A stretch of DNA of 64,000 bases, taken from NCBI RefSeq assembly GCF_006345805.1, contig NC_042997.1:212412001-212476000 (forward strand). The letters are read 5' to 3'. The notes beneath the pieces were generated by a model. It was given only the letters and a program-made list of their open reading frames with translations. It searched no databases and had not been told where the DNA came from. Numbering within the stretch: position 1 is the first letter of the stretch; every line of letters begins with the position of its first letter. The stretch is from Octopus sinensis. Its lineage: Eukaryota. Positions 2,642 to 63,982 of this stretch are shown here, in pieces. The position numbers and the translations under genes are program-made.

Positions 2642-3261
2642 CGTATTTTAACCATTTTCCTGCATACAGGTAAAATCATTGACTCTGCCCAAATATGAAA
2701 CTAAAGTGGGTTTTTTTTTTTTCTGCGTCCATTTCACTAATTTCACTTGCATCTTTTGTTTTCTTTGTTCTGATAATCTTTTAAAATAATAATTCCAAAG
2801 TGTTTTTCATTGAAGGCAGGAATGTTTAGTTTTGAAATGTTTAATTTGCCTGGAATCAAACACCAAAGCACAATGTGAGCTGATTTTCAGTTCTACTTCC
2901 AGACAAACCAAAGCCTGAACAGTAGTTCTTGGATTTGTAAATAGGTCAACTATTTATGGTTATTGGAATTCATGGCATTTGAGAGAGAGGGTCATTATTG
3001 GATTCACGATCATCAAAGCTATCCTTCTTATTTAGAAATTTATCTGATTTTTATATGTGTATCAAATGCTAGATGAAAATCATTTGTAACATTCTCTATA
3101 TCTTAATGTGAATGGATTGTTGAGAGACTGTGGTGATGTTATTTCAACTGCTTCCATCTGATAACAAATTAAAAAGACTTGGAATTTTCTCTCCACTACG
3201 TCACTGTCATACATATTAACTAGAAACTTATTAACATCTCTTCATGCTTTGATTTTATTTT

Positions 3262-8830: not shown

Positions 8831-8909
8831 ATCCTTAGTATTATTACCCTTTGCTTGTATTGTTGGTGGTGGTGGTGGTGGTAGTAGCACTGTTGCAAGC
8901 TATTGTTCG

Positions 8910-10914
8910 CTTTGACTCTTACCATTTCTCTTTGACTCTTACCATTTCTCTTTGACTCTTACCATTTCTCTTTGACTCTTACCATTTCTCTTTGACTCTT
9001 ACCATTTCTCTTTGACTCTTACCGTTTCTCTTTGACTCTTACCGTTTCTCTTTGACTCTTACCATTTCTCTTTGACACTTACCATTTCTCTTTGACTCTT
9101 ACCGTTTCTCTTTGACACTTACCATTTCTCTTTGACTCTAACCATTTCTCTTTGACTCTTACCATTTCTCTTTGACTCTTACCGTTCTCTTTGACTCTTA
9201 CCATTCTCTTTGAACTTACCATTTTCTTTGACTCTTACCGTTCTCTTTGACTCTTACCGTTTCTCTTTGACTCTTACCATTTCTCTTTGACACTTACCAT
9301 TTCTCTTTGACTCTTACCGTTTCTCTTTGACACTTACCATTTCTCTTTGACTCTTACCATTTCTCTTTGACTCTTACCATTTCTCTTTGACTCTTACCGT
9401 TTCTCTTTGACTCTTACCATTTCTCTTTGACTCTTACCATTTCTCTTTGACTCTTACCATTTCTCTTTGACACTTACCATTTCTCTTTGACTCTTACCAT
9501 TTCTCTTTGACTCTTACCATTTCTCTTTGACTCTTACCATTCTTTTGACACTTACCATTTCTCTTTGACACTTACGTTTCTTTGACACTTACCATTTCTC
9601 TTTGACTCTTACCATTTCTCTTTGACACTTACCATTTCTCTTTGACTCTTACCATTTCTCTTTGACTCTTACCATTTCTCTTTGACTCTTACCATTTCTC
9701 TTTGACACTTACCATTTCTCTTTGACTCTTACCATTTCTCTTTGACACTTACCATTTCTCTTTGACTCTTACCATTTCTCTTTGACTCTTACCGTTTCTC
9801 TTTGACTCTTACCATTTCTCTTTGACTCTTACCATTTCTCTTTGACTCTTACCATTTCTCTTTGACACTTACCATTTCTCTTTGACTCTTACCGTTTCTC
9901 TTTGACACTTACCATTTCTCTTTGACTCTTACCGTTTCTCTTTGACTCTTACCATTTCTCTTTGACTCTTACCATTTCTCTTTGACTCTTACCATTTCTC
10001 TTTGACTCTTACCATTTCTCTTTGACTCTTACCATTTCTCTTTGACACTTTACCATTCTCTTTGACTCTTACCATTTCTTTGACTTTTCCATTTCTCTTT
10101 GACTCTTACCATTTCTCTTTGACTCTTACCATTTCTTTTGACTCTTACCATTTCTCTTTGACTCTTACCATTTCTCTTTGACTCTTACCAGTCTCTTTGA
10201 CTCTTACCATTTCTCTTTGACTCTACCATTCTCTTTGACTCTTACCATTCTCTTTGACTTTTACCATTTCTCTTGACTCTTACCATTTCTCTTGACATTT
10301 ACCATTTCTCTTTGACTCTACCATTTCTCTTTGACTCTTACCAGTTCTCTTTGACCTATTACCATTTCTCTTTGGACTCTTACCATTTCTCTTTGACACT
10401 TACCATTTCTTTGATCTTACCATTTCTCTTTGACTCTTACCATTCTCTTTGACACTTACCATTTCTCTTTGACTCTACCATTCTCTTTGACACTTACCAT
10501 TCTCTTTGACTCTTACCATTTCTCTTGACTCTTACCATTTCTCTTTGACTCTTACCATTCTCTTTGACTCTTACCGTTTCTCTTTGACATTACCATTTCT
10601 ATTTGACTCTTACCATTTCTCTTTGACTTACCATTTCTCTTTGACTCTTACCATTTCTCTTTGACTCTTACCATTTCTCTTTGACTTTACCATTTCTCTT
10701 TGACTCTTACCATTTCTCTTTGACTTTTACCATTTCTCTTTGACTCTTACCATTTCTCTTTGACTCTTACCATTTCTCTTTGACTCTTACCATTTCTCTT
10801 TGACTCTTACCATTTCTCTTTGACTCTTACCATTTCTCTTTGACTCTTACCATTTCTCTTTGACTCTTACCATTTCTCTTTGACTCTTACCATTTCTCTT
10901 TGACTCTTACCGTT
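8910..10914. repeat. 20-bp tandem satellite, ~100 copies, unit CTTTGACTCTTACCATTTCT
   Basis: Direct inspection; variants gacactt and accgtt; indel-rich stretch ~10050-10750. Confidence 0.98.
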
Positions 10915-19222: not shown

Positions 19223-20062
19223 GTTGCCATAGTAACAAAGCTAACACACACAGTGAAGCTGCTTGGCAAAGATTGACCATGAACTCTGCTGTACATGTGC
19301 ACTAATTTTTAATATTCTAGCTCACTTCCACTGTTTACAGCAGTGCTTGGAAGGAAGGTGTGTAGCGTGTGATTGTCACATTGACCATGACAGAGAAAGT
19401 TTTCATGGTGATACCTTACCTGCTCAGAGGCTTGTGCAAAGTTACAGAAAGTGTATGGAGAGGTGTGTATGAGCCGTACACAAGTGTATGAGTGGTTCAG
19501 ACGTTTCTAAGATGGTTGAAAAAATGTTGATATTTCCAAACATTCTGGGAGACCCGCAACCAGCAGAACTAAGAAAAATATTGCAGATGTGCATGCAGCT
19601 GTGAGGGAAAAGCATCTAATCACCATCCGTGAGTTATCAGAAGATGTGCAGATTAGTTACGGTTCAGTTCAGTCGATTATCACTGAAGATTTGGGTGTGA
19701 GACGCATGTCTGCCAAGTTTGTGCCAAAACTGCTTTCAGGTGATCAAAAAGACAATCGGGTTTCAGTTGCACAAGATCTCCTTGACTGTCGAGAATGATG
19801 GAAACTTTTTGAAAACTTTGTGTAGGCCTCTGAGCAGGTATCTCCAAGCTTCTGGCAAAATCCAATGCAGATTCTCTGCTCAACTTGCTCTTTCATGGTC
19901 AATGCAGTGATCACACGCTACACACCTTCCTTCCAAGCACTGCTGTAAACAATGGAAATGAGCTAGAACGTTAAAACTTAGTGTGCATGCACCACAGTGG
20001 TTAAGGTCAATTGGTGCCAAGAGGCTTCACTCTGCATGCTTTAGCTTCGTTACTATGACAAC
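19223..20062 (+). mobile_element. Mariner derivative: 5' half of the transposase followed by an inverted copy of its own 5' end
   Basis: Plus frames SRTQVYEWFRRF..ITIRELSEDVQISYGSVQSIITEDLG..SAKFVPKLLS; ~19815-20062 is the reverse complement of ~19223-19450. Confidence 0.88.
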
Positions 20063-20120
20063 AATCCAAATACTCACTAATCAGACAACACAACACACAT
20101 ATATAAACGTATATTTTATC

Positions 20121-20448
20121 TGTTACTTGTTTCAGTCATCAGGCTGTGGCCATGCTGGGGCACTGCCTTGAGGAAATCTAGTCTAAGTAATCGACCCCTT
20201 TTGCTGAACTGCGAAGTTATAGGGATGTAAACATATCAACACCAGTTGTCAAGGGGACAGCAAAGACACACACTCACCCATAAATATGTACGATGGGCTT
20301 CTTATAGTTTCCATTTGTCAAATCCACTCACAAGGCTTTATTGGCTTGACACTTGAGTAGATAACAATTGCTCAAGGTGACATGCAGTGGTAGTGAATCC
20401 AGAACAAAGTGGTTAGGAACCAAATTTTTTTACCATACAGCCATACCT
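20121..20448 (-). mobile_element. SINE family B
   Basis: Reverse complement of the family B consensus seen elsewhere in the window. Confidence 0.8.
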
Positions 20449-20473
20449 GCACCTATGACCATACTTGCACACA

Positions 20474-21470
20474 CATCATCATCATCATTTAACATCCATT
20501 GTCCAAGCTGGCATGGGTTGATCAGTTTGGCCAGTGCTGGAAAGCTGGAAGGCTGCACCAGACTCCAGTCTGATTTGGCATGATTTTCTACAGCTGGATG
20601 CCCTTCCTAATGCCAACCACTGTGAGAGTCTAGTGGGTGCTTTTACATTTCACTGGCACAGGTGCCATTTGTGTGACACCTGTATCTGCTATGACTGACT
20701 GATTTTACTTGGCTTAATGGGACTTATTTTCAAGTATGACATAATGCCAAAGGTCTCAGTCATTGCTTCCTGGAGGCCCAACACTCAAAAGGTGCTTTAC
20801 ATGTGCCACTGGCATCAGCCATCTTGCCCCCATGAGGTCCAATGCTCGAAAGATGCTTTTTACATGCCACAGGCATGGGTGCTAGTTATATAGCACCAGC
20901 ATCGGCCATGACTACAATTTCACTTGGCTTGCTGGGTCTTCTCAAGCACTGCATATCACCAAAGGTCTCAGTCACTAGTCATTGCCTCTGTGAGGCTCAA
21001 AGTTCAAAGATCATGCTTCACCATATCGTCCCATGTCTTCCTGGGTTTACTTCTACCACAGGTTCCCTCCACAGATAAAGGTTGGCACTTCTTTACTCAG
21101 CTGTCCTCGTCCATTCATATCATATGACCATAGCAGTGCAGTTGTCTCTCTTGCACACCACATCTGATTCCTCTTATGCCCGACTTCTCTCTCAAGATGC
21201 TTACACTGTCAAACATGGGCACTGACAGTGCACATCCAGCGAAGCATACTGGCTTCATTTCTTTCAAGCCTATGCATATCCTTGGCTGTCATAGCCCATG
21301 TTTCACTGCCATGTAACATAGCTGGTTGCACACAGTTATCATACAATCTGCCTTTCACTCTGAGGGAGAGGCCCTTTGTTGCCAGCAGGGGTAGGAGCTC
21401 TCTGAACTTTACCTAGCCTATACTTATTTTCACAGCTACACTCTCAGAGCATCTACCTCCAAATATATAT
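20474..21470 (-). mobile_element. 5'-truncated RTE LINE
   Basis: (CAT)n tail, shared 3'UTR and RT C-terminal remnant homologous to 12128-13570. Confidence 0.88.
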
Positions 21471-21690
21471 ATATAGATATATATATATATGTAAATGGAT
21501 GAATGAATTATCCTTTGTTTACCATTAACATGGAAAATTTAATAAACAGTTACCAGGGTAGCAAAATTCACACAAGTAACAAGGATGTAGCGACCTATTC
21601 AAAGGCAGAAACACTGGGTTAATGTGCAGTTATTTGTGTAGTATAAGTAAATAAATGGAGTTGAACACAGATGCTATTCAAATTCTTTTA

Positions 21691-21772
21691 ATTTGACATA
21701 TGTTTCGAAGACAACATTGGTTTTATTCCAAAGGAATAAACGGTGTGAAATGCAATCTTCTCATCAGGAAAG
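21691..21772 (-). ncRNA. Type I hammerhead ribozyme motif, antisense copy with weakened stem I
   Basis: CTTTC-CTGATGA-GAAGA..TCTTC-GAAA-CATATG-TC-AAATT; core intact, the G that opens stem I is missing. Confidence 0.6.
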
Positions 21773-21896
21773 AAAGAGAGCCTATCTCAACAACAAGACA
21801 TTATAACAATTTCGATGACTGCATAAATGATAAATAGAACGTTATTGCAGTCATCAAAATTGTTATAATGTCTTGTTGTTGAGATAGGCTCTCTTT

Positions 21897-21979
21897 CTTT
21901 CCTGATGAGAAGATTGCATTTCACACCGTTTATTCCTTTGGAATAAAACCAATGTTGCCTTCGAAACATATGTCGAAAG
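21897..21979 (+). ncRNA. Type I hammerhead ribozyme, canonical core, predicted cleavage after C21974
   Basis: Stem I CTTTC(21897-901)/GAAAG(21975-79); core CTGATGA(21902-08); stem II GAAG/CTTC enclosing TTTATTCC-ttt-GGAATAAA; GAAA(21963-66); palindromic stem III ACATATGT; GUC triplet. Confidence 0.85.
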
Positions 21980-22082
21980 TAAAAGAATTTGAATAGTATC
22001 TGCGTTCAACTCCATATAGATAGATATGTATGTATGTATGTATGTATGTAGCACGCACTCTTGAGGACATGCAATGAATTCT

Positions 22083-23290
22083 AAGCTATTTCTTGCATGC
22101 ATCAAAGACGTTTGGTCTGACCATCAGCATTCAGAAAACTGATCTTGTCAATCAACCCATTTGTGACCGTCTTCCTACTGTTTCCCTACTCTACATGTTG
22201 ATGGGAAAGCATTAAAAACCGTTTCCTCCTTCATTTATCTTGGTTCCATTGTGTTGATGATGTGAAGATGGATAAAGAAAAAGAGTCCAGAATTGGAAAG
22301 GCTAGCTCCGCTTTTGGTAAGCTTTATCACAGGCTATGAAACAGCCACAACATATCGTTGAAAGTGAAAGTTAATGTATATGTATAATTCAGTGGTCTTA
22401 ACAGCATTGCTTTATGAAGCGTAATCTTTGACTCTGTTCCAAAAGCACATCAACCAGCTTGACACTTTTCATATGCGATGCTTGCATACTATCTCCAACA
22501 TAAAGCCGAGTGACCATATTCATAACAGTGAGGTACTAACAAAATGCAACATATCAGGTGTGGAAGCCATCCTCATCAAAATACAGCTTAGATGGTCAGG
22601 TCATCTCTCACATATGAGTGATATCCAAAGTAACTTCTCTTTGGCCAAAGGTCAGTTGGAAGGCCACTCTTGTGCTTCAAAGACAAACTAAAAGACAATC
22701 TGAAACGATGCAACATTCCCTTTTCTTCCTGGGAGATCAAAGCATCAGATTACAGAACCCGGTGCCAGTCCTGCTTCTCCTCACTTCAAAGATTTGAGCA
22801 AAGTTGACTCCAACTTTGGGACCAACTTCAAGCAAGCATGAAGGCTCGCTGGCAAAACGCTGCTTCTCTGAATGGAAACCTATTTCTTTACTACCTCCAA
22901 GGGGCTAAACACAGAGAGGACAGACAAACGGATTAAGTTGATTATATCGCCACCAGTGTGTAACTGCTACTTATTTAATCGACCCCGAAAGGACGAAAGG
23001 CAAAGTTGACCTCAATGGAATTTGAACTCAGAACGTAGAAGCAGATGAAATACCGCTAAGCATTTCGCCCGACGTGCTAACATTTCTGCCAGCTCCTCTG
23101 AATGGAAACCTTAAATGTCATTGTAGTTTTGTGGTAGGAAGTAAAGCAGGTCTTGCCTTCCACTCAAGAAAACTCATAGTAAATGATCTACAAGCCCTCA
23201 AGCAAACTGAGTCCTCAACTTGTTCCATTTGCCTAAAGGTTTGCAAGGAACCAGCCGGCCTCAAAGAGACACATTCATGTCCATAGGACA
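22083..23290 (+). mobile_element. RTE-BovB-like LINE 3' fragment interrupted by a family A SINE
   Basis: SRIGKASSAFGKL..KVKVNVY; ORF 22428-22691 HINQLDTFHMRCL..IQLRWSGHL; C-terminal TCSICLKVCK. Confidence 0.85.
22882..23095 (-). mobile_element. SINE family A with 16-bp TSD
   Basis: TSD ctctgaatggaaacct at 22866-22881 and 23096-23111. Confidence 0.9.
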
Positions 23291-23807
23291 TGATTAATAC
23301 TATATTTTACTGAACCCTTATTTTGTTGTTCATGACCAGAGAAGCCATCATATATATATATCAAAACAGGAGATAGGAAAACTTTTTGGCATTATTTATT
23401 CACCATTACACATGTTTCATTTGCTAGTAGGAATTACAAAACTGTACAGATATTAGAAGACATACAAGATATCTCATATTACAAATTCTTCAGATTGAGA
23501 ATCAAATGATACCAAAAAATGTTCCAATCTTGTGTTTTGATATTATTATTCTGAAGAAAATATTTTCTGGTATTTTTAACTTTTATGCATACCTCACACA
23601 AATATCACATCTACATTCAGATTTGGAAAACTGAAATAAACAGCTGTGCCTCAAGAGGACACATCTTGGATTTTAACCCTATTGATATAAAACATATATG
23701 TGTCTGTCTGTGTGTATTCTCATCATTTCCTGTTGTTGTCTTTGCTTGCTTCAAACCATTTTGTTTTATTTCATTTTATTTTATAATTTTTTTTTTTTTA
23801 CTTACAG

Positions 23808-23912
23808 AGGGAATTAAAGTTGCAAAATCCACATCAATAAATAATCTTTTAAAATCTGAATTCTGGCTTATAGTAAACAACAGGGAATATCATGTCACAC
23901 CTCCTGAACAAA
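23808..23912 (+). CDS. MCU: MCU coding exon (N-terminal domain; equivalent to human residues ~131-166)
   Basis: Poly-T tract plus cttacag acceptor and gtaagt donor; encodes (x)GIKVAKSTSINNLLKSEFWLIVNNREYHVTPPEQ(T), versus human GVRVAASTGIDLLLLDDFKLVINDLTYHVRPPKRD; phase 1/1; splices in frame to 51538. Confidence 0.95.
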
Positions 23913-38912: not shown

Positions 38913-38917
<5 letters not shown>

Positions 38918-39116
38918 TAGGTGAATGAATTATCCTATGTTTATCGTCAGCATGGAAAATTCGTTTAACCGAAACCTGGGTAGCAAATTCACGTCAGAAA
39001 CACGGTTGAAGCGACCTGCCAAGGGTAGAAACTCCGGGTTCATGTCTAGAAATTGGTGTGTTGTATATGAATAAATGAAAGAATGGAGTCGAACGAAGAT
39101 GTTAACAAAATTTCTT

Positions 39117-39120
<4 letters not shown>
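38913..39120 (+). mobile_element. Homolog of the 21490-21690 PLE-associated segment, truncated just before the hammerhead
   Basis: gaatgaattatcct..catggaaaatt..gggtagcaaa..gcgacct..aatggagt.gaac; lies between (TA)n and (CT)n(TA)n. Confidence 0.7.
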
Positions 39121-42189: not shown

Positions 42190-42651
42190 GCATCCTGCGT
42201 CACGGAAGCCAGTCGAGGCGGTGCTGGCATTGGCCACGAGTGGGATCGTGCTTTTTACGTACCACCAGACCAGGGATCCTGGCTGGTTCAATCGAAATCA
42301 AATTGAACCAGCCAGGATCCCTGGTCTGGTGGTACGTAAAAAGCACTATCCGACTCGTGGCCGATGCCAGCACCGCCTCGACTGGCTTCCATGCCGGTGG
42401 CACATAAAATACACCAATCCGACCGTGGCCGTTGCCAGCCTCGCCTGGCACCTGTGCAGGTGGCACATAAAAAGCACCCACTACACTCACGGAGTGGTTG
42501 GCGTTAGGAAGGGCATCCAGCTGTAGAAACATTGCCAGATAAGACCGGAGCCTGGTGCAGCCTTCTGGCTTCCCAGATCCCCGGTCGAACCGTCCAACCC
42601 ATGCTAGAATGGAGAACGGACGTTAAACGATGATGACGATGATGATGATGA
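42190..42651 (+). mobile_element. RTE 3'UTR/tail with an 89-bp fold-back inverted duplication at its 5' end
   Basis: Arms 42204-42292 and 42302-42390, 3 mismatches, 9-nt loop; (GAT)n tail at 42630-42651. Confidence 0.88.

Positions 42652-46391: not shown

Positions 46392-46402
<11 letters not shown>
46111..46402. mobile_element. MITE-like inverted repeat, ~82-bp arms
   Basis: 46111-46192 is the reverse complement of 46318-46402 apart from a 5-nt insertion and one mismatch. Confidence 0.75.
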
Positions 46403-46426
<24 letters not shown>

Positions 46427-46429
<3 letters not shown>

Positions 46430-46754
46430 TCTCCCTGTTTTTTTCTGTCCCTTTCTGTAGAAGAGCGTAGGCTCGAAACGTAAAAGACTTTTTTCTATTC
46501 CTGAGCGTTATACTAATACATCTGTTTGTTTTGTACACCACCTGTCTTCGTCTTTTATTTTTTTCGTAAACTCTCCCTATATATATATATATTATATATA
46601 TATATATTCTCTCCCTGTTTTTTTCTGTCCCTTTCTGTAGAAGAGCGTAGGCTCGAAACGTAAAAGACTTTTTTCTATTCCTGAGCGTTATACTAATACA
46701 TCTGTTTGTTTTGTACACCACCTGTCTTCGTCTTTTATTTTTTTCGTAAACTCT

Positions 46755-46760
<6 letters not shown>
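46427..46760 (+). repeat. Two identical tandem units (period 180 bp), each with a variant hammerhead motif (46447-46488 and 46627-46668)
   Basis: Lines 46441/46621, 46501/46681 and 46561/46741 match; motif GTC-cc-TTT-CTGTAGA-A-GAGC-gtag-GCTC-GAAA-CG-TA-AAAGAC. Confidence 0.85.
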
Positions 46761-46800
<40 letters not shown>

Positions 46801-49220: not shown

Positions 49221-49266
49221 CATAACATTATATGTGCGCACACACACACACACACACACACGTGAC

Positions 49267-49604
49267 GATGATGATGATAGCTGTGTGGTTGTACATAAAA
49301 TGTTTGCTTTGCAAGCACATGGGTCTGAGTTCAATCCTATAATGCTGCAGAAACCTTTTGCTGCCCAGCAACAGATGAGTGAAACTGGGAGGACAAAAGC
49401 TGAACACATGTTGGACACACACATATATATATGTGTGTGTGTGTGTGTGTCCACACCCAACTTGTGTTCAGCTTCTGTCCTCCCAGTTTCACTCATCTGT
49501 TGCTGGGCAGCAAAAGGGTTCCGCAGCATTATAGGATTGAACTCAGACCCATGTGCTTGCAAAGCAAACATTTTATGTACAACCACACAGCTATCATCAT
49601 CATC
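49267..49604. repeat. Long near-perfect inverted repeat (148-bp arms, tRNA-SINE-like head)
   Basis: 49267-49414 versus 49457-49604, ~4 mismatches; spacer (CA)n(TA)n(TG)n. Confidence 0.92.
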
Positions 49605-50030
49605 ATCATAATCATCGTTTAACGTCCGTTTTCCGCGCTAGCACGGGTTGGACGGTTCGACCGGGGTCTGAGAAGCCAGGGGCTGCACCAGGCTCCAGTC
49701 TGGCAGAGTTTCTACAGCTGGATGCCCTTCCTAATGCCAACCATTCCGCGAGTGTAGTGGGTGCTTTTTACGTGCCACCTGCACAGGTGCCTGGGGGTCT
49801 GGCATATCATCGTTTAATGTCTGCTTTCCATGCTGGCATGGATTGAACAGTTTGACAGGACCTGGCAGGCCAGGGAGCTGTGCTGACTCCTATTGTCTGT
49901 TGTAGCATGTTTTCTATGGCTGGATACCCTTCCTAATGCCAACCACTTTACAGAGTGTCCACTGGTGCATTTTTGCAGCCCCAGCATGAGTGCATTTTAT
50001 GTGGCACTAGCACCTGTGAGGGACAAGCCT
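49605..50030 (-). mobile_element. Two stacked RTE tail fragments
   Basis: Tail motif starts twice, at ~49610 and ~49806. Confidence 0.8.
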
Positions 50031-51537
50031 GCATCTATGACTGACAGCAGTTTTACTTAAGTATGGCTGCGTTTATGTATGAATATAACTGTGTCTGTTT
50101 TCACTACAGTCACATGGTTATACATGCACCTATGCACACACACACACACACACACACATTACATCTAATGAAAAATACACGAATATGAAATATAAAAGAT
50201 AAAAGATGTTTCTTCCTCCTTTCTTACCTGTTTACTGCTCTAATTGGTTCTTAAATGAATTAAATTATCTGCTTTAGAATTAAATTACAAATGAGTGTTC
50301 CAGTAATAACTAGCTTAAAAGCTTTTAGATGTTTGCCTTGCTCTCTTCTCCACCCAGTTTGTCTGTTCCTTTATCAACATTGATTGGCAGGTATTAAATA
50401 AATATAAAACGATATTACAATAAAATACTTATTGAATTGGGTCTACTCTATGGAGTGGCCTATCTTTGAAACGTTCTCACATATTTGTTGAATAGTATTC
50501 TGTGGATGGTTTATGAAATGATTATCATCATTATTATTTCTTTATTTGAAAAGAAAAGCAGGCTACTATTGTCAGACCTAAAAATTCTTTACAGAGGCTG
50601 TATTCCAACAAATTAGGAGAATGGAAAGCCAATTATAAATACTTTATTTGAAAATTTAAATTTGTTGAAGATGTATTATTTTATGCCAATTGAGATGCAT
50701 TTGTTAACTAGACCCAAGAAAAATTCCACAATAGAGAAATATTTTTTTTAATTGCGTTTCAAAAATACTGAGTAATTGAAGGAATAGGGATTTAAAATCT
50801 ATAATAATAACCATTGTTTTGTAACATAATTTTAAAAATATGTTTTTAACTGAATCCCTTTTTTTTTTATTATTATTATTATTATTTGACTATTTGACTA
50901 CAAATAGCTTTCAAAGCACCAGTGGGTATTAGGGAGGTGACTTCACAGAAATATGACACATATTTGTGTTGTTTGGAGAAAGTCATTAAATAATTACAGT
51001 CAGAACTCCGATGAAGTTCCAACAACAAAAGATAAAAACTTGAATTTTTGTAATTGCTTTTCAACTCTGTTCAATATAAATGTTATTATTTTATCAAACT
51101 GTTTGCTTAAAACATGTTGTTACTAATTCTTTAACCCTTTCAAATCCAGAACCCCTGCTGATCCTCTTATAAAACTCTTCCATACCGCTGGCTTTACTGT
51201 AAAATTTTTCTGATAATGGTGATCTGATTATTCTAAGATCCATTTTACTGAGGGTCGAATTTAGTGACTTGAAATTAAATCTTTTTAAGAAAAATGCTTT
51301 CATTTTTCTTCTTTCTTTATTTTAATAACTTTTAATAGAATCTTTATTTTACTGAATTATGTTCTGCTTCTCTGTTAATAAAACAGTTTTTTTTTTCTGT
51401 GTTTTGTTTGTATATAACCCCCTTGTTTTTTTTTTGGTGGGTTTTTTTTTCAGTCAAAAGTTCTTTCTCTCTGTTTAAATGTTTAAACTTTATTTCTTAA
51501 CTGCATAAAATATCTATTTCTGTATTCTTATTTGCAG

Positions 51538-51701
51538 CTTTTCTGCTTGGTAATGAAAGTGTAGAAAAACTTTCTGATATCAAGATGTTAGTGTCTCAGT
51601 TATATAGCTCACTAAACATTGAACAGTACCAATTAGAAAGAGAAAACGATTTGCTACAGAGGTTAGAGGATCTTAAACTCCAACTGGAACCACTAGAAAA
51701 G
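51538..51701 (+). CDS. MCU: MCU coding exon (linker and coiled-coil 1; equivalent to human residues ~166-219)
   Basis: tttgcag acceptor and AAG|gtaacg donor; encodes (T)FLLGNESVEKLSDIKMLVSQLYSSLNIEQYQLERENDLLQRLEDLKLQLEPLEK, versus human DLLSHENAATLNDVKTLVQQLYTTLCIEQHQLNKERELIERLEDLKEQLAPLEK. Confidence 0.96.
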
Positions 51702-52689
51702 GTAACGCTTCCCTTCTTTTTGTTTCTAAATTAAAATTTAAAGTCATTCTGATTAATTAATAAATTTATAGCAGTTGAATTGTTTTGATAATTTAATTTA
51801 CATTTTCTAAATTGTTTTTAACCTTGAAAATGTTAATATTTCTTCAAGAAAGTTGTAAAATATAGACATTATTTTCCACACAAGCTTTTAATTATATTCC
51901 AACAATCTCAGAGAGTCCATAAAATAAAACACAAGAATAGAGAATGGCTCACTTTTGCTGGTTGAAAAGTGAGCTTAGTGAGAGTTAATGTTTATTTAGA
52001 CTTGATGGATATATCAAATTCTTATTGTGCAACTGTGTCCACTCCTTGCTAACACCAGACTTACTCCTTTTCTGAGACCACACACAAGAATTTGTACCTC
52101 TGTTTTTTGGCTTATCAAAAACCTAACTAAGTCCTATGCCTTCATCTTGTCACTTGTACACAGCACACAACTATTCCTCTTTGCTCCAACATCTCTTCAA
52201 TCTCACCTGACCTACATCTCATAGTTATTGATGGTAGCCTGAAGTTTTAAACCATTCAGGGAGAATAAAGTGTGTCAACAGTATGAGAGTCTGTGGGACT
52301 GTTTTGGTCACGTCTGAAAGGTATCACACTGGTCAGTTATTTCCAGCCAGAGATAATATGATTTATTGTTTCCTCTCCATCTCCACATATTCTGCAGTTA
52401 CTTGTTATGTTTCTTTTCATTACATTAATTTCTGGTGGGGAGGCTTTGGTCTTGTGCTGCAATTAAAAATCCTTCAGTCTCTGCTTTAAGTCCTGAGCTT
52501 CTCAACCATTGTTAGGATTTTGCTTAGTCTCTTTCTTGTTACTATCACCACCACCACCACCACCATTATTATTATTACTAATCTGTGAGTGTTGGTACTA
52601 TAATAGCAAAAATCAGGTTTTAAATTTATCTTGGCAACTTTTGGCTATGGAACTGTAGAAAACGTATATATTTGACTATCGAGAAGTGG

Positions 52690-54851: not shown

Positions 54852-55193
54852 GCCGTTCGCCAGCCTCGTCTGGCACCTGTGTCGGTGGCACATAAAAAAC
54901 ACCATCCGAGCGTGGTCGTCTGCCAGCCTTGTCTGGCACCTGTGTCGGTGGCACATAAAAACACCATCCGAGCGTGGCCGTTCGCCAGCCTCGTCTGGCA
55001 CCTGTGTCGGTGGCACATAAAATCACCCACTACACTCTCGGCGTGGTTGGCGTTAGGAAGGGCATCCAGCTGTAGAAACACTGCCAGATCTGACTGGCTT
55101 GGTGCAGCCTTCGGGCTCCCCAGACCCCAGTTGAACCGTCCAACCCATGCTAGCATGGAAAGCGGACGTTAAATGATGATGATGATGATGATG
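54852..55193 (+). mobile_element. RTE 3'UTR with three ~62-bp internal tandem repeats and (GAT)n tail
   Basis: Unit starts at 54852, 54915 and 54977. Confidence 0.9.
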
Positions 55194-57010: not shown

Positions 57011-57049
<39 letters not shown>

Positions 57050-57298
57050 TACAGACACACACACACACACATACATACACACATATACACACATACACAT
57101 ACACATGCACACATAAATATGCACACACACATACATACACATACATATACACACACGTACATATACACACATATACACACACATACACACACATACACAT
57201 ACACACACATACACATATACACACACATATACACACACACATACACACACACATACATACACACACATATACATATACACACATATACACACATATAC

Positions 57299-57329
<31 letters not shown>

Positions 57330-57600
57330 TACAGACACACACACACACACACACATACATACACACACATACACACACACATACACATACACATGCACAC
57401 ATAAATATGCACACACACATACATACACATACATATACACACACGTACATATACACACATATACACACACATACACACACATACACATACACACACATAC
57501 ACATATACACACACATATACACACACACATACACACACACATACATACACACACATATACATATACACACATATACACACATATACATATATATATATAT
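57011..57600. repeat. Compound (CA/TA) cryptic microsatellite, tandemly duplicated with ~288-bp period
   Basis: Marker catgcacacataaatat occurs at 57104 and 57392. Confidence 0.9.
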
Positions 57601-57775
57601 AACAAAAGACGAAGACAGGTGGTGTACAAAACAAACAGATGTATTAGTATAACGCTCAGGAATAGAAAGTCTTTTACGTTTTGAGCCTACGCTCTTCTAC
57701 AGAAAGGGACACAGAAAAAAACAAGGAGAGAAAAAAATGTGTGTAGTGGCTTACGATCTATCATGGCGACTGATA
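57601..57775 (-). mobile_element. Third copy of the 46427 family; hammerhead motif 57669-57710 with G12->A
   Basis: Reverse complement of the 180-bp unit; reads GCTC-AAAA-CG instead of GCTC-GAAA-CG. Confidence 0.85.
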
Positions 57776-57856: not shown

Positions 57857-58260
57857 ATACATACAATGTAGATTGGATTAAAATCCAAGTTGTGTCCTCT
57901 TGAAGCAATCTTGCTTATTTCAGTATTTCAAATCTGTGGATGTTATATTTGTGTGAAATATTCACAAGAGTTGAAAACTCTGGGAAATATTTTTTTGCAG
58001 AGTAATGTGTTTCATTTGCAGGAGATGCAAAACTGTGTGTGTTAGATGAACATAAGAAATTCTTCTCAGAGAGAATCAAACACTACATTCTCAGTCTGAA
58101 GAATTTCCAATAAGAGATATCTTGCCTGTCTTCTAATATCTGTACAGTTTTGTAATTCCTACTAGCTAATGAAACATGTGTAATGGTGAATAAATAATGG
58201 CAAAAAGTTTTCCAATCTCCTGTTTTTTACACACACACACACACACACGTGTGTGTGTAT

Positions 58261-63232: not shown

Positions 63233-63982
63233 AATCATCATCATCATCATCATTTAGCGTCCGCTTTCCATGCTAGCATGGGTTGGATGGTTCAACTTGG
63301 GTCTGTGAAGCCAGAAAGCTGCATCAGGCCCAGTCTGATCTGGCAGTGTTTCTACAGCTGGATGCCCTTCCTAACGCCAACCACTCCGTGAGTGTAGTGG
63401 GTGCTTTTTACGTGCCACCTGCACAGGTGCCAGACGGAGCTGGCAAACGGCCACGAACGGATGGTGCTTTTACGTACAACCGGTATGGGGGCCAGGCGAG
63501 GCTGGCAACGGACACGAACGGATGGTGTTTTTACGTGCCACCGGCACGGAGGCCAGTCGGGGTGGCGCTGGCAACTGCCACGATCGGATGGTTCGCTTAA
63601 CCACAGCTGCAATTTCCATTGAAGTTGATCGACTTCGATTTTGGTTCTGCTTTCTGATATCTGATTTGATTTGGTTTGATTTTGATTTGATTTGATCTTC
63701 ACTTATCTCAACGGGTCTTCACAAGTGGAGTTTTGTGTCCCAAGAAGGAAAGGTATGTAGGCCACAGGTTATGTTCTCACTGGTCTTGCCGGGTCTTCTC
63801 ACACACAGCATACTTCCATAGGTCTCAGTCCCTAGTCATTTCCTTGGTGAGACCTAAAGTTCGAAGGTCGTGCTTCACCACCTCGTCCCAGGTTTTCCTG
63901 GGTCTACCTCTTCCACAGGTTCCCTCAACTGCTAGGGTGTGGCACTTTCGCACACAACTATCTTCAGCCATTCTTGTCACAT
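63233..63982 (-). mobile_element. 5'-truncated RTE LINE (RT end, 3'UTR with subrepeats and (GATTT)n, tail)
   Basis: Reverse complement encodes KCHTLAVEGTCGRGRPRKTWDEVVKHDLRTLG; (CAT)n tail at 63233. Confidence 0.92.

What the first reader, a model, noticed from the sequence alone, without database searches (positions are those of the whole stretch)
21897..21979. Fully canonical hammerhead ribozyme on the sense strand of an MCU intron
Seen: every conserved core nucleotide is present (C3-U4-G5-A6-U7-G8-A9, G12-A13-A14-A15.1, U16.1, C17). Stem I is a perfect 5 bp (CUUUC/GAAAG). Stem II closes with G10.1-C11.1 and carries an unusually long nested hairpin (UUUAUUCC/GGAAUAAA). Stem III is the palindrome ACAUAUGU and the triplet is GUC. 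Established: minimal type I HHRs with palindromic stem III occur in Penelope pLTRs and can cleave as dimers. Inference: the motif lies ~1.8 kb upstream of an MCU exon in the transcribed orientation, so it could cut the MCU pre-mRNA co-transcriptionally after C21974.
Basis: partly seen in the sequence, partly recalled or inferred. Interest (0 to 1): 0.85.

Follow-up and report, generated by a model that had tools for sequence, protein, structure and literature searches.

The report
Retroelement hammerhead relic locked in hairpin
The hammerhead ribozyme motif is really there, but it is half of a head-to-head duplicated retrotransposon fragment in a repeat-filled intron, so in the MCU transcript it should pair with its mirror copy rather than cut the RNA.

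Summary
Window 21897-21979 (+) carries every hammerhead core nucleotide, a 5-bp helix I, a G10.1-C11.1-closed long helix II, the palindrome ACAUAUGU as helix III, and a GUC cleavage triplet. Chance expectation is about 0.001 per window. Rfam Hammerhead_1 aligns end to end but scores 18.7 bits against a gathering score of 34.

The motif is the right arm of a near-perfect inverted duplication: 21655-21823 versus 21846-22015, 170 nt, 6 differences, 22-nt spacer. The left arm holds a mirror hammerhead on the minus strand with a broken helix I.

The left copy runs a further ~200 nt to a (TA)n tract. A third, hammerhead-less copy of that 200-nt body (38915-39119) starts within 4 nt of the cleavage site.

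This architecture matches published descriptions of Penelope-like element and retrozyme insertions: inverted 5'-truncated twins, microsatellite targets, and a dimer-type type I hammerhead.

In the plus-strand pre-mRNA, 80 of 83 ribozyme nucleotides pair with the antisense arm. Forcing the ribozyme fold costs about 115 kcal/mol. Helix III has only 2 bp as a monomer, and no sense partner exists within 64 kb. Cutting of the MCU pre-mRNA is therefore very unlikely. This is an ordinary transposon relic of low interest.

The parts
21897..21979 (+). Type I hammerhead motif. Helix I 21897-21901 / 21975-21979; core 21902-21908 and 21963-21966; helix II 21909-21962; palindromic helix III 21966-21973; C17 at 21974, with predicted cleavage between 21974 and 21975.
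   Evidence: Read directly; regex and descriptor scans; RF00163 full-length alignment at 18.7 bits, below the gathering score of 34.
21690..21772 (-). Mirror hammerhead on the minus strand. Core and helices II and III are intact, and helix II is one to two pairs longer because of a U in place of C. The 3' strand of helix I reads AAAUU instead of GAAAG, so helix I is broken. C17 is at 21695.
   Evidence: It fails the helix I requirement of the descriptor.
21846..22015 (+). Right arm of the inverted duplication. It is a 5'-truncated element copy in plus orientation: 51 nt upstream of the hammerhead, the hammerhead itself, and 40 nt downstream of the cleavage site.
   Evidence: the repeat finder I1 and I2; global alignment showing 170 nt with 6 differences.
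21655..21823 (-). Left arm of the inverted duplication. It is the same element segment in minus orientation, meeting the right arm head to head.
21824..21845 (.). 22-nt spacer that forms the loop between the arms.
21491..21654 (-). Continuation of the left copy beyond the palindrome. With 21655-21694 it forms a ~200-nt non-coding body downstream of the cleavage site, ending at a (TA)n tract.
   Evidence: 73-76% identity to 38915-39119.
21463..21490 (.). (TA)n-type microsatellite abutting the 3' end of the left copy. The string ATATAGATA at 21471-21479 recurs in direct orientation at 22014-22022, making it a candidate target-site duplication.
   Evidence: family D1. This is low-complexity sequence, so the evidence is weak.
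22014..22050 (.). (ATAG)2(ATGT)n microsatellite abutting the 3' end of the right copy.
38915..39119 (-). Third, hammerhead-less copy of the 200-nt body, bounded by (TA)n at its 3' end and (GA)n at its 5' end on the minus strand. Unambiguous homology starts 4 nt after the position equivalent to the cleavage site.
   Evidence: blastn E = 5e-26; alignment A1; sequence.
23808..23912 (+). MCU exon in the N-terminal domain, equivalent to human residues ~131-165.
   Evidence: Matches PDB MCU chains at E = 2.5e-5; tblastn E = 4e-6; splice signals read.
51543..51710 (+). Next MCU exon, equivalent to human residues ~167-222.
   Evidence: tblastn E = 4e-13. A Logan ORF from a related species is 98% identical.

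Best explanation
The motif is a real hammerhead-type sequence that belongs to a decayed retroelement insertion, not to the host gene.

The element, read 5' to 3', is: at least 51 nt, then a type I hammerhead, then a ~200-nt non-coding body, then a microsatellite end. At this locus two 5'-truncated copies lie head to head, forming a ~360-nt palindrome with a 22-nt loop between microsatellites. They sit in a transposon-filled MCU intron.

This is the insertion pattern described for Penelope-like elements (PLEs) and their non-autonomous retrozyme derivatives. The PLE enzyme nicks and extends both DNA strands at AT-rich or microsatellite targets.

In the element's own life cycle the hammerhead has a 2-bp helix III with a palindromic loop. 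It is built to pair with a second copy in tandem transcripts, form an 8-bp intermolecular helix III, and trim unit-length RNA.

At this locus it is a passenger. In the MCU pre-mRNA the antisense twin is transcribed first and zips up with the ribozyme arm into a ~170-bp double-stranded hairpin, so no cleavage is expected.

Shown: the motif, the palindrome, the energetics, the third copy and the microsatellite flanks. Inferred: the PLE or retrozyme origin, formation of the palindrome in a single event, and catalytic silence in vivo.
For: Sequence evidence from this window:
- The motif is real and its chance rate is low.
- The arms are 170 nt with 6 differences and meet head to head.
- The element is a repeat. 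The left copy's body has a 73-76% identical copy at 38915-39119. That copy is also bounded by (TA)n and starts within 4 nt of the cleavage site, as expected if hammerhead-cut RNA or the unit boundary defines the 5' end.
- Of the 6 differences between the arms, 3 fall in the 83-nt ribozyme and 2 destroy helix I of the left copy. So there is no sign of selection on the ribozyme after insertion.
- The hairpin dominates the fold: -276.6 kcal/mol overall, 80 of 83 ribozyme nucleotides paired to the other arm, and a cost of 114.6 kcal/mol to force the ribozyme.

Published descriptions that match:
- PLE hammerheads have a short palindromic helix III, a conserved G10.1-C11.1 pair and a long helix II. 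They occur mostly as single truncated copies, and dual motifs 100-700 bp apart on opposite strands are noted. Single motifs are inactive (PMC4209133).
[quoted passage not shown] The hammerhead lies near the 3' end, and (TA)n or other microsatellites are the preferred targets (PMC8557442).
- The PLE protein cleaves and extends both strands and prefers AT-rich DNA (PMC11167929).
- About 44% of Xenopus retrozyme copies are intronic (bioRxiv 10.64898/2026.07.22.740005).
Against: - No PLE reverse transcriptase or GIY-YIG endonuclease remnant lies within 19300-23800 in any frame.
- No other hammerhead-bearing copy could be retrieved from any collection. Family membership therefore rests on one locus plus one hammerhead-less copy.
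- The extra nucleotide between A9 and G10.1 that is typical of PLE minimal hammerheads is absent.
- The two outer ends differ by ~160 nt (40 versus 200 nt past the cleavage site). That is more than the published 30-40-bp 'tail'.
- Two other short-spacer palindromes of unrelated repeats occur in the same window. Inverted duplication may therefore be a general habit of this genome rather than a PLE signature.
- The RF00163 score is below the gathering threshold.
Confidence: 0.72

Rival explanations
1. One reading: an active intronic hammerhead that cuts the MCU pre-mRNA co-transcriptionally after C21974, as a monomer or dimer, lowering or regulating MCU expression.
For: The core and three helices are complete on the sense strand. 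Helix I is intact only in the sense copy. The third copy supports GAAAGU as the ancestral sequence there.
Against: - The antisense arm lies immediately upstream, and the hairpin is favoured by about 115 kcal/mol over the ribozyme fold.
- The ribozyme fold is disfavoured even in isolation.
- Helix III has only 2 bp as a monomer, and there is no sense partner within 64 kb.
- No loop-loop tertiary contacts are evident.
- Single minimal Penelope-type motifs (S. mansoni) are inactive in vitro and dimers are weak (PMC4209133).
- The arms differ equally inside and outside the ribozyme.
Confidence: 0.04
2. A chance hammerhead look-alike inside a foldback or MITE-like palindromic repeat that has nothing to do with ribozymes.
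For: The Rfam score is below the gathering threshold. The hammerhead fold is not the predicted minimum. A few tens of chance hits are expected per multi-gigabase genome. No homologues with covariation are available. Palindromes are common in this window.
Against: - The expected count is only about 0.001 per window.
- Several features lie beyond the descriptor yet match PLE or retrozyme hammerheads: an 8-nt palindromic helix III, a GUC triplet, and 7 pairs available in helix II.
- The repeat unit is asymmetric. The body extends only from the left arm and exists elsewhere without a palindrome, which does not suit a MITE.
- The third copy begins at the cleavage site.
Confidence: 0.08
3. The functional unit is the ~170-bp intronic double-stranded RNA hairpin rather than the ribozyme. 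It would act as a substrate for Dicer (small RNAs against the element family) or for ADAR editing, or as a structure that affects splicing of the long MCU intron. This reading is compatible with the transposon origin.
For: The fold is extremely stable, at -276.6 kcal/mol with z = -36. Generic long-hairpin microRNA models match well below their thresholds, for example MIR2646 at 133.8 bits against a gathering score of 245. The hairpin is transcribed in the sense orientation within an intron.
Against: There is no conservation or expression evidence. The Rfam matches reflect hairpin shape only. The other palindromes in the window suggest such hairpins are by-products of insertion.
Confidence: 0.1

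Closest known systems
Hammerheads in the pseudo-LTRs of Penelope-like elements (Cervera & de la Pena 2014, PMC4209133; structural arrangements in PMC8557442 and PMC11167929)
   Same: - Type I topology with a short helix III and a palindromic sequence suited to dimer formation.
- A G10.1-C11.1 pair, a long helix II, and a short open helix I.
- Copies that are mostly truncated and dispersed.
- Pairs of motifs on opposite strands 100-700 bp apart.
- An inverted 5'-truncated twin copy.
- Microsatellite or AT-rich targets, with the hammerhead near the element's 3' end.
   Different: - There is no unpaired nucleotide between A9 and G10.1.
- Helix II carries a 54-nt insert with a nested 8-bp hairpin.
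- No reverse transcriptase or GIY-YIG coding remnant lies nearby.
- The outer ends of the two copies differ by ~160 nt rather than by the 30-40-bp tail.
Metazoan non-LTR retrozymes (Cervera & de la Pena 2020, PMC7229834; Li et al. 2026 bioRxiv 10.64898/2026.07.22.740005)
   Same: A short, AT-rich, non-coding element of a few hundred nucleotides carrying one type I hammerhead that needs a partner copy. Monomer copies are dispersed and often intronic. One copy begins at the cleavage site, as a unit-length RNA would.
   Different: It is not in a direct tandem array. Here the two copies are inverted, so no circular RNA can be excised. No expression data are available.
Conserved intronic hammerheads of amniotes (HH9 and HH10; de la Pena & Garcia-Robles 2010, cited as ref. 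22 in PMC7229834; details from my own knowledge)
   Same: A hammerhead on the sense strand inside an intron of a protein-coding gene.
   Different: Those ribozymes are single-copy, conserved across species, have stable helices and loop-loop contacts, and are not clamped by an adjacent antisense copy. None of these properties is seen or could be shown here.

Membership tests
Hammerhead ribozyme, type I (Rfam RF00163) | Conserved core: C3 U4 G5 A6 N7 G8 A9, G12 A13 A14, the A15.1-U16.1 pair, and H17. | tested here: met
   All are present at 21902-21908, 21963-21966, 21973 and 21974.
Hammerhead ribozyme, type I (Rfam RF00163) | Three helices around the core, with helix I open-ended and helix II closed by G10.1-C11.1. 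| tested here: met
   Helix I has 5 bp. Helix II has 4 bp, then a bulge and 3 more bp, then a distal hairpin. Helix III has 2 bp as a monomer or 8 bp as a dimer.
Hammerhead ribozyme, type I (Rfam RF00163) | Score at or above the family's gathering threshold. | tested here: not met
   No hit at the gathering threshold in the window. The score is 18.7 bits against 34, with E = 0.02 in a 106-nt search. The shortfall comes from the 50-nt loop-2 insertion and the A-U-rich stems.
Hammerhead ribozyme, type I (Rfam RF00163) | Compensatory changes in the helices among homologues. | tested here: inconclusive
   Only two near-identical copies exist. Their 3 differences inside the motif lengthen helix II in one copy and break helix I in the same copy. 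No further homologues were found.
Hammerhead ribozyme, type I (Rfam RF00163) | Site-specific self-cleavage. | not testable with these tools
   This needs in vitro transcription and RNA end mapping.
Penelope-like element insertion / PLE-type hammerhead | Short helix III with palindromic 15.2-16.2 positions and loop, allowing an active dimer. | tested here: met
   ACAUAUGU is self-complementary, and the 8-bp duplex has -7.0 kcal/mol. The criterion comes from PMC4209133.
Penelope-like element insertion / PLE-type hammerhead | [quoted passage not shown] | tested here: not met
   G10.1 follows A9 directly and pairs with C11.1.
Penelope-like element insertion / PLE-type hammerhead | An inverted 5'-truncated twin and/or partial tandem, with a microsatellite or AT-rich target. 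| tested here: met
   The arms are head to head with a 22-nt spacer. (TA)n lies on the left and (ATAG)(ATGT)n on the right. The criterion comes from PMC8557442 and PMC11167929. Caveat: unrelated palindromes also occur in this window.
Penelope-like element insertion / PLE-type hammerhead | Linkage to a telomerase-like reverse transcriptase and a GIY-YIG endonuclease ORF. | tested here: not met
   A six-frame Pfam scan of 19300-23800 finds only a Mos1 HTH_48 remnant. This is expected for a severely truncated or non-autonomous copy, so it does not exclude PLE-dependent mobilisation.
Metazoan non-LTR retrozyme | Direct tandem repeats of 170-400-nt units, each with a type I hammerhead. | tested here: not met
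   There is no direct repeat of the unit. Tandem Repeats Finder reports nothing at this locus, and the two copies are inverted.
Metazoan non-LTR retrozyme | Expression as small circular RNAs. | not testable with these tools
   No transcriptome of the source organism is available.

The most novel reading that the evidence does not exclude
The antisense arm acts as a built-in clamp on a sense-strand intronic hammerhead. Unwinding or A-to-I editing of the hairpin, or pairing in trans with transcripts of other element copies, could conditionally release the ribozyme. It would then cut the MCU pre-mRNA, giving a switchable self-cleaving intron.
Probability: 0.02. Interest if true: 0.8.

Novelty: new member of a known kind. 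Interest (0 to 1): 0.18.

Why it matters
It matters little for biology at large. Type I hammerheads with a palindromic helix III occur by the thousand in animal genomes as parts of Penelope-like elements and retrozymes, and many copies lie in introns.

Two things may be useful:
- **A caution for the scan.** A perfect hammerhead core in an animal genome should be read together with its repeat context. Here an antisense twin 130 nt upstream changes the functional prediction completely.
- **A possible genomic trace of cleavage.** A hammerhead-less copy of the element begins within 4 nt of the predicted cleavage site. That may be a trace of hammerhead processing before retrotransposition. The ~170-bp double-stranded RNA that the MCU intron must form is also a plausible target for editing or small-RNA pathways.

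Tried and rejected
- **Rfam at gathering thresholds on the whole window:** nothing. At E up to 10 on 900 nt, only generic long-hairpin microRNA models appeared, far below their thresholds. I rejected these as reflecting hairpin shape only.
- **Pattern scans for hammerheads with the same helix III.** Viral contigs gave 0 matches. Metagenome contigs gave 3 related contigs, L001-L003, which have no homology to the arms and no convincing helices I or II. I rejected them as unrelated.
- **Protein searches.**
  - The first MCU exon peptide found nothing.
  - The second exon found one Logan ORF, P0001. It comes from a related species whose contigs are ~78% identical to 50062-52345 and do not reach the hammerhead.
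  - The ORF that reads across the antisense hammerhead had no relatives in either protein library.
  - An exact look-up of the ORF over the MCU exon returned nothing on record.
- **Source organism:** not identified. A literature search on the run accessions gave an irrelevant hit.
- **Upstream MCU exon.** The only positionally tempting tblastn hit (3133-3195) has stops and no donor site, so I rejected it. A hit at 19637-19738 is the helix-turn-helix of a mariner transposase.
- **tRNA-like SINE head in the element:** ARAGORN found none.
- **Published sequences.** Supplements and full-text sequence-string searches for this hammerhead found nothing relevant.
- **Loose regex hits** at 58096, 60792, 23493 and 3669 fail the structural descriptor.

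Full report

Yes. Reading 21897-21979 on the plus strand gives the following:
- CUUUC (helix I, 5' strand)
- CUGAUGA (C3-A9)
- a 54-nt helix II that opens with GAAG and closes with CUUC, so G10.1 pairs with C11.1
- GAAA (G12-A15.1)
- CAUAUG then U16.1
- C17 at 21974
- GAAAG (helix I, 3' strand)

A regex scan for the core and a stricter structural descriptor both find this site. The descriptor found nothing in 300 dinucleotide-preserving shuffles of the window. In 250 Mb of first-order Markov sequence with the window's composition it found 1-2 hits. That is about 0.0005-0.001 expected per 64-kb window on both strands, or a few tens per multi-gigabase genome.

Rfam gives no hammerhead at gathering thresholds, nor at E up to 10 in a 900-nt search. 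When only 106 nt are searched, RF00163 (Hammerhead_1) aligns over its whole length, 1-45 of 45, at 18.7 bits against a gathering score of 34, with E = 0.02. The model places a 50-nt insertion in loop 2.

So the motif is present, complete and not a chance product at the scale of this window. It does not pass the curated family threshold.

**2.

The motif is one arm of a palindrome. The repeat finder reports arms 21692-21823 and 21846-21977 as 98% complementary with 22 nt between them, extended at 85% to 21643 and 22027. A global alignment sets the arms at 21846-22015 and 21823-21655. That is 170 nt with six differences: 21856 A/G, 21958 C/U, 21975 G/deletion, 21979 G/U, 21997 U/C and 22003 C/U.

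The minus strand therefore carries a mirror hammerhead at 21772-21690. In it, helix II is slightly longer because of the U at the 21958-equivalent position. The 3' strand of helix I reads AAAUU, so helix I is lost.

Three of the six differences lie within the 83-nt ribozyme and three within the other 87 nt. There is no sign that the ribozyme has been protected since the arms formed.

**3. The element behind it**

The left (minus-strand) copy does not stop at the end of the palindrome. From the cleavage site it continues for ~200 nt (21694 down to 21491) to a (TA)n tract. This body is 73-76% identical (E = 5e-26) to 38915-39119, a copy that has no palindrome and no hammerhead. That copy is also bounded by (TA)n at its 3' end.

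On the minus strand its homology begins at GUAAAGAAAU, 4 nt after the position equivalent to the cleavage site. The four nucleotides before that, GAGA, belong to a (GA)n tract and match GAAA at 3 of 4 positions. It also supports GAAAGU, the right-arm version, as the older state of helix I.

The right arm ends only 40 nt past the cleavage site, at an (ATAG)2(ATGT)n tract. A 9-nt string, ATATAGATA, occurs in direct orientation at both outer junctions (21471 and 22014). It is a candidate target-site duplication, but the evidence is weak because the sequence is low-complexity.

Flanking sequence:
- By my reading of the six-frame translation, left of the (TA)n tract lies the C-terminal tail of a LINE on the minus strand.
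- By the same reading, a CR1/L2-like LINE tail lies on the plus strand to the right of ~22055.
- Pfam recognises neither LINE tail. It finds only a Mos1 HTH_48 remnant near 19418-19516, and no reverse transcriptase or GIY-YIG domain in 19300-23800.

**4. Comparison with the literature**

- *Cervera and de la Pena (PMC4209133)* describe hammerheads in the pseudo-LTRs of Penelope-like elements.
  - They have a very short palindromic helix III, a conserved G10.1-C11.1 pair, a long helix II and a short helix I.
  - They occur mostly as single, truncated copies. The authors note dual motifs ~100-700 bp apart on opposite strands.
  - Single motifs showed no detectable self-cleavage, and dimeric constructs showed only low activity.
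- *Craig et al. [quoted passage not shown] They also state that hammerheads lie near the 3' ends and that microsatellites, including (TA)n, are preferred targets.
- *Frangieh et al. (PMC11167929)* show that a purified PLE protein cleaves and extends both DNA strands, prefers AT-rich DNA, and starts reverse transcription at internal sites. This gives a mechanism for head-to-head twins.
- *Li et al. (bioRxiv 10.64898/2026.07.22.740005)* relate animal retrozymes to PLE pseudo-LTRs. They report that ~44% of Xenopus retrozyme copies overlap introns.

The locus fits this picture in topology, target and ribozyme type.

It departs in four ways:
- it lacks the unpaired nucleotide between A9 and G10.1;
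- it has an unusually long helix II;
- it lacks any nearby PLE ORF;
- its two outer ends differ by ~160 nt rather than by a 30-40-bp tail.

Two other short-spacer palindromes of unrelated repeats lie in the same window: 49263-49608 and 42198-42396. Inverted duplication as such is therefore not specific to this element.

**5. Will it cut the MCU pre-mRNA?**

An MCU exon lies at about 23808-23912, and the next at 51543-51710, both on the plus strand. The first of these starts at about residue 131 behind a polypyrimidine tract and AG, so the hammerhead lies in an intron. I could not find the upstream exon in the window.

The mechanism fails on structure:
- The whole palindrome folds at -276.6 kcal/mol, with z = -36.
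- In the nascent transcript 21640-21985, at the moment the ribozyme is complete, 80 of its 83 nucleotides are paired to the antisense arm. Imposing the hammerhead fold costs +114.6 kcal/mol.
- Because the arms meet at a 22-nt loop, the hairpin can zip up nucleotide by nucleotide as the right arm emerges. This point is inference.
- Even as an isolated 83-mer, the hammerhead fold (-9.6 kcal/mol) loses to an alternative (-13.5) and makes up ~0.07% of the ensemble. Nearest-neighbour energies ignore core tertiary contacts.
- As a monomer, helix III is A-U and C-G closing an AUAU loop. The 8-bp form needs a second sense copy, and none exists on the plus strand of the window.

**6. Verdict**

The motif is a Penelope-type hammerhead in a sense intronic position. 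It is best explained as a silent relic of a head-to-head retroelement insertion (confidence ~0.7).

| Alternative | Confidence | Note |
|---|---|---|
| The hairpin itself as a double-stranded RNA substrate | ~0.1 | Not exclusive of the best explanation |
| A chance look-alike | ~0.08 | |

It is a new member of a known kind, and interest is low.

Noticed in passing
window 38915-39119 (minus strand): A hammerhead-less copy of the element's 200-nt body lies between (TA)n and (GA)n tracts. Its 5' end falls within 4 nt of the position equivalent to the hammerhead cleavage site. It may be a retro-copy of ribozyme-cut RNA.
   Followed up: partly
window 49263-49414 / 49457-49608: A second near-perfect palindrome with 152-nt arms, 97% complementary, and a 42-nt spacer. 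It looks like two copies of a SINE with a tRNA-like head (GAGTTCAATCC box) placed tail to tail across a (CA)n(TA)n(TG)n tract. It is unrelated in sequence to the hammerhead element.
   Followed up: partly
window 42198-42292 / 42302-42396; related tandem arrays at 54852-55027 and 63400-63556: A third short-spacer palindrome (95-nt arms, 95% complementary, 9-nt spacer) lies inside a G+C-rich repeat family containing GGCACATAAAAAGCACC. The family also forms 61-62-nt tandem arrays and recurs many times in the window as ORF-like LQLDALPNAN translations.
   Followed up: no
window 8906-10911: A 2-kb minisatellite: about 102 copies of the 20-nt unit TTCTCTTTGACTCTTACCAT at 92% match.
   Followed up: no
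window ~19418-19516 (+), extending to ~19800: A remnant of a mariner/Mos1-type transposase N-terminus (Pfam HTH_48, E = 3e-6). A weak tblastn hit of human MCU at 19637-19738 belongs to this remnant, not to MCU.
   Followed up: yes
window ~20900-21440 (-) and ~22055-22800 (+): Two different 5'-truncated LINE C-terminal tails flank the hammerhead palindrome and point away from it. One has an RRLRWYGH-type motif and the other a QLRWSGH-type motif. I recognised them by eye; Pfam does not cover these regions.
   Followed up: partly
window 23415-23493 (-) and 58096-58174 (+): Two copies of another dispersed repeat give a loose CUGAAGA...GAAA regex match. They lack helices I and III and are not hammerheads.
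   Followed up: yes
L004-L006 (Logan runs SRR11869394, SRR11869384, SRR11869390): Contigs from a related, unidentified species align to window 50062-52345 at ~76-79% identity, including the second MCU exon. The same read sets could be used to look for the orthologue of the hammerhead locus.
   Followed up: partly
window 46397-46788 and 57013-57601: Two long-period tandem duplications embedded in microsatellite-rich sequence: a 180-nt unit in 2.2 copies at 99% match, and a 288-nt unit in 2.1 copies at 96% match.
   Followed up: no
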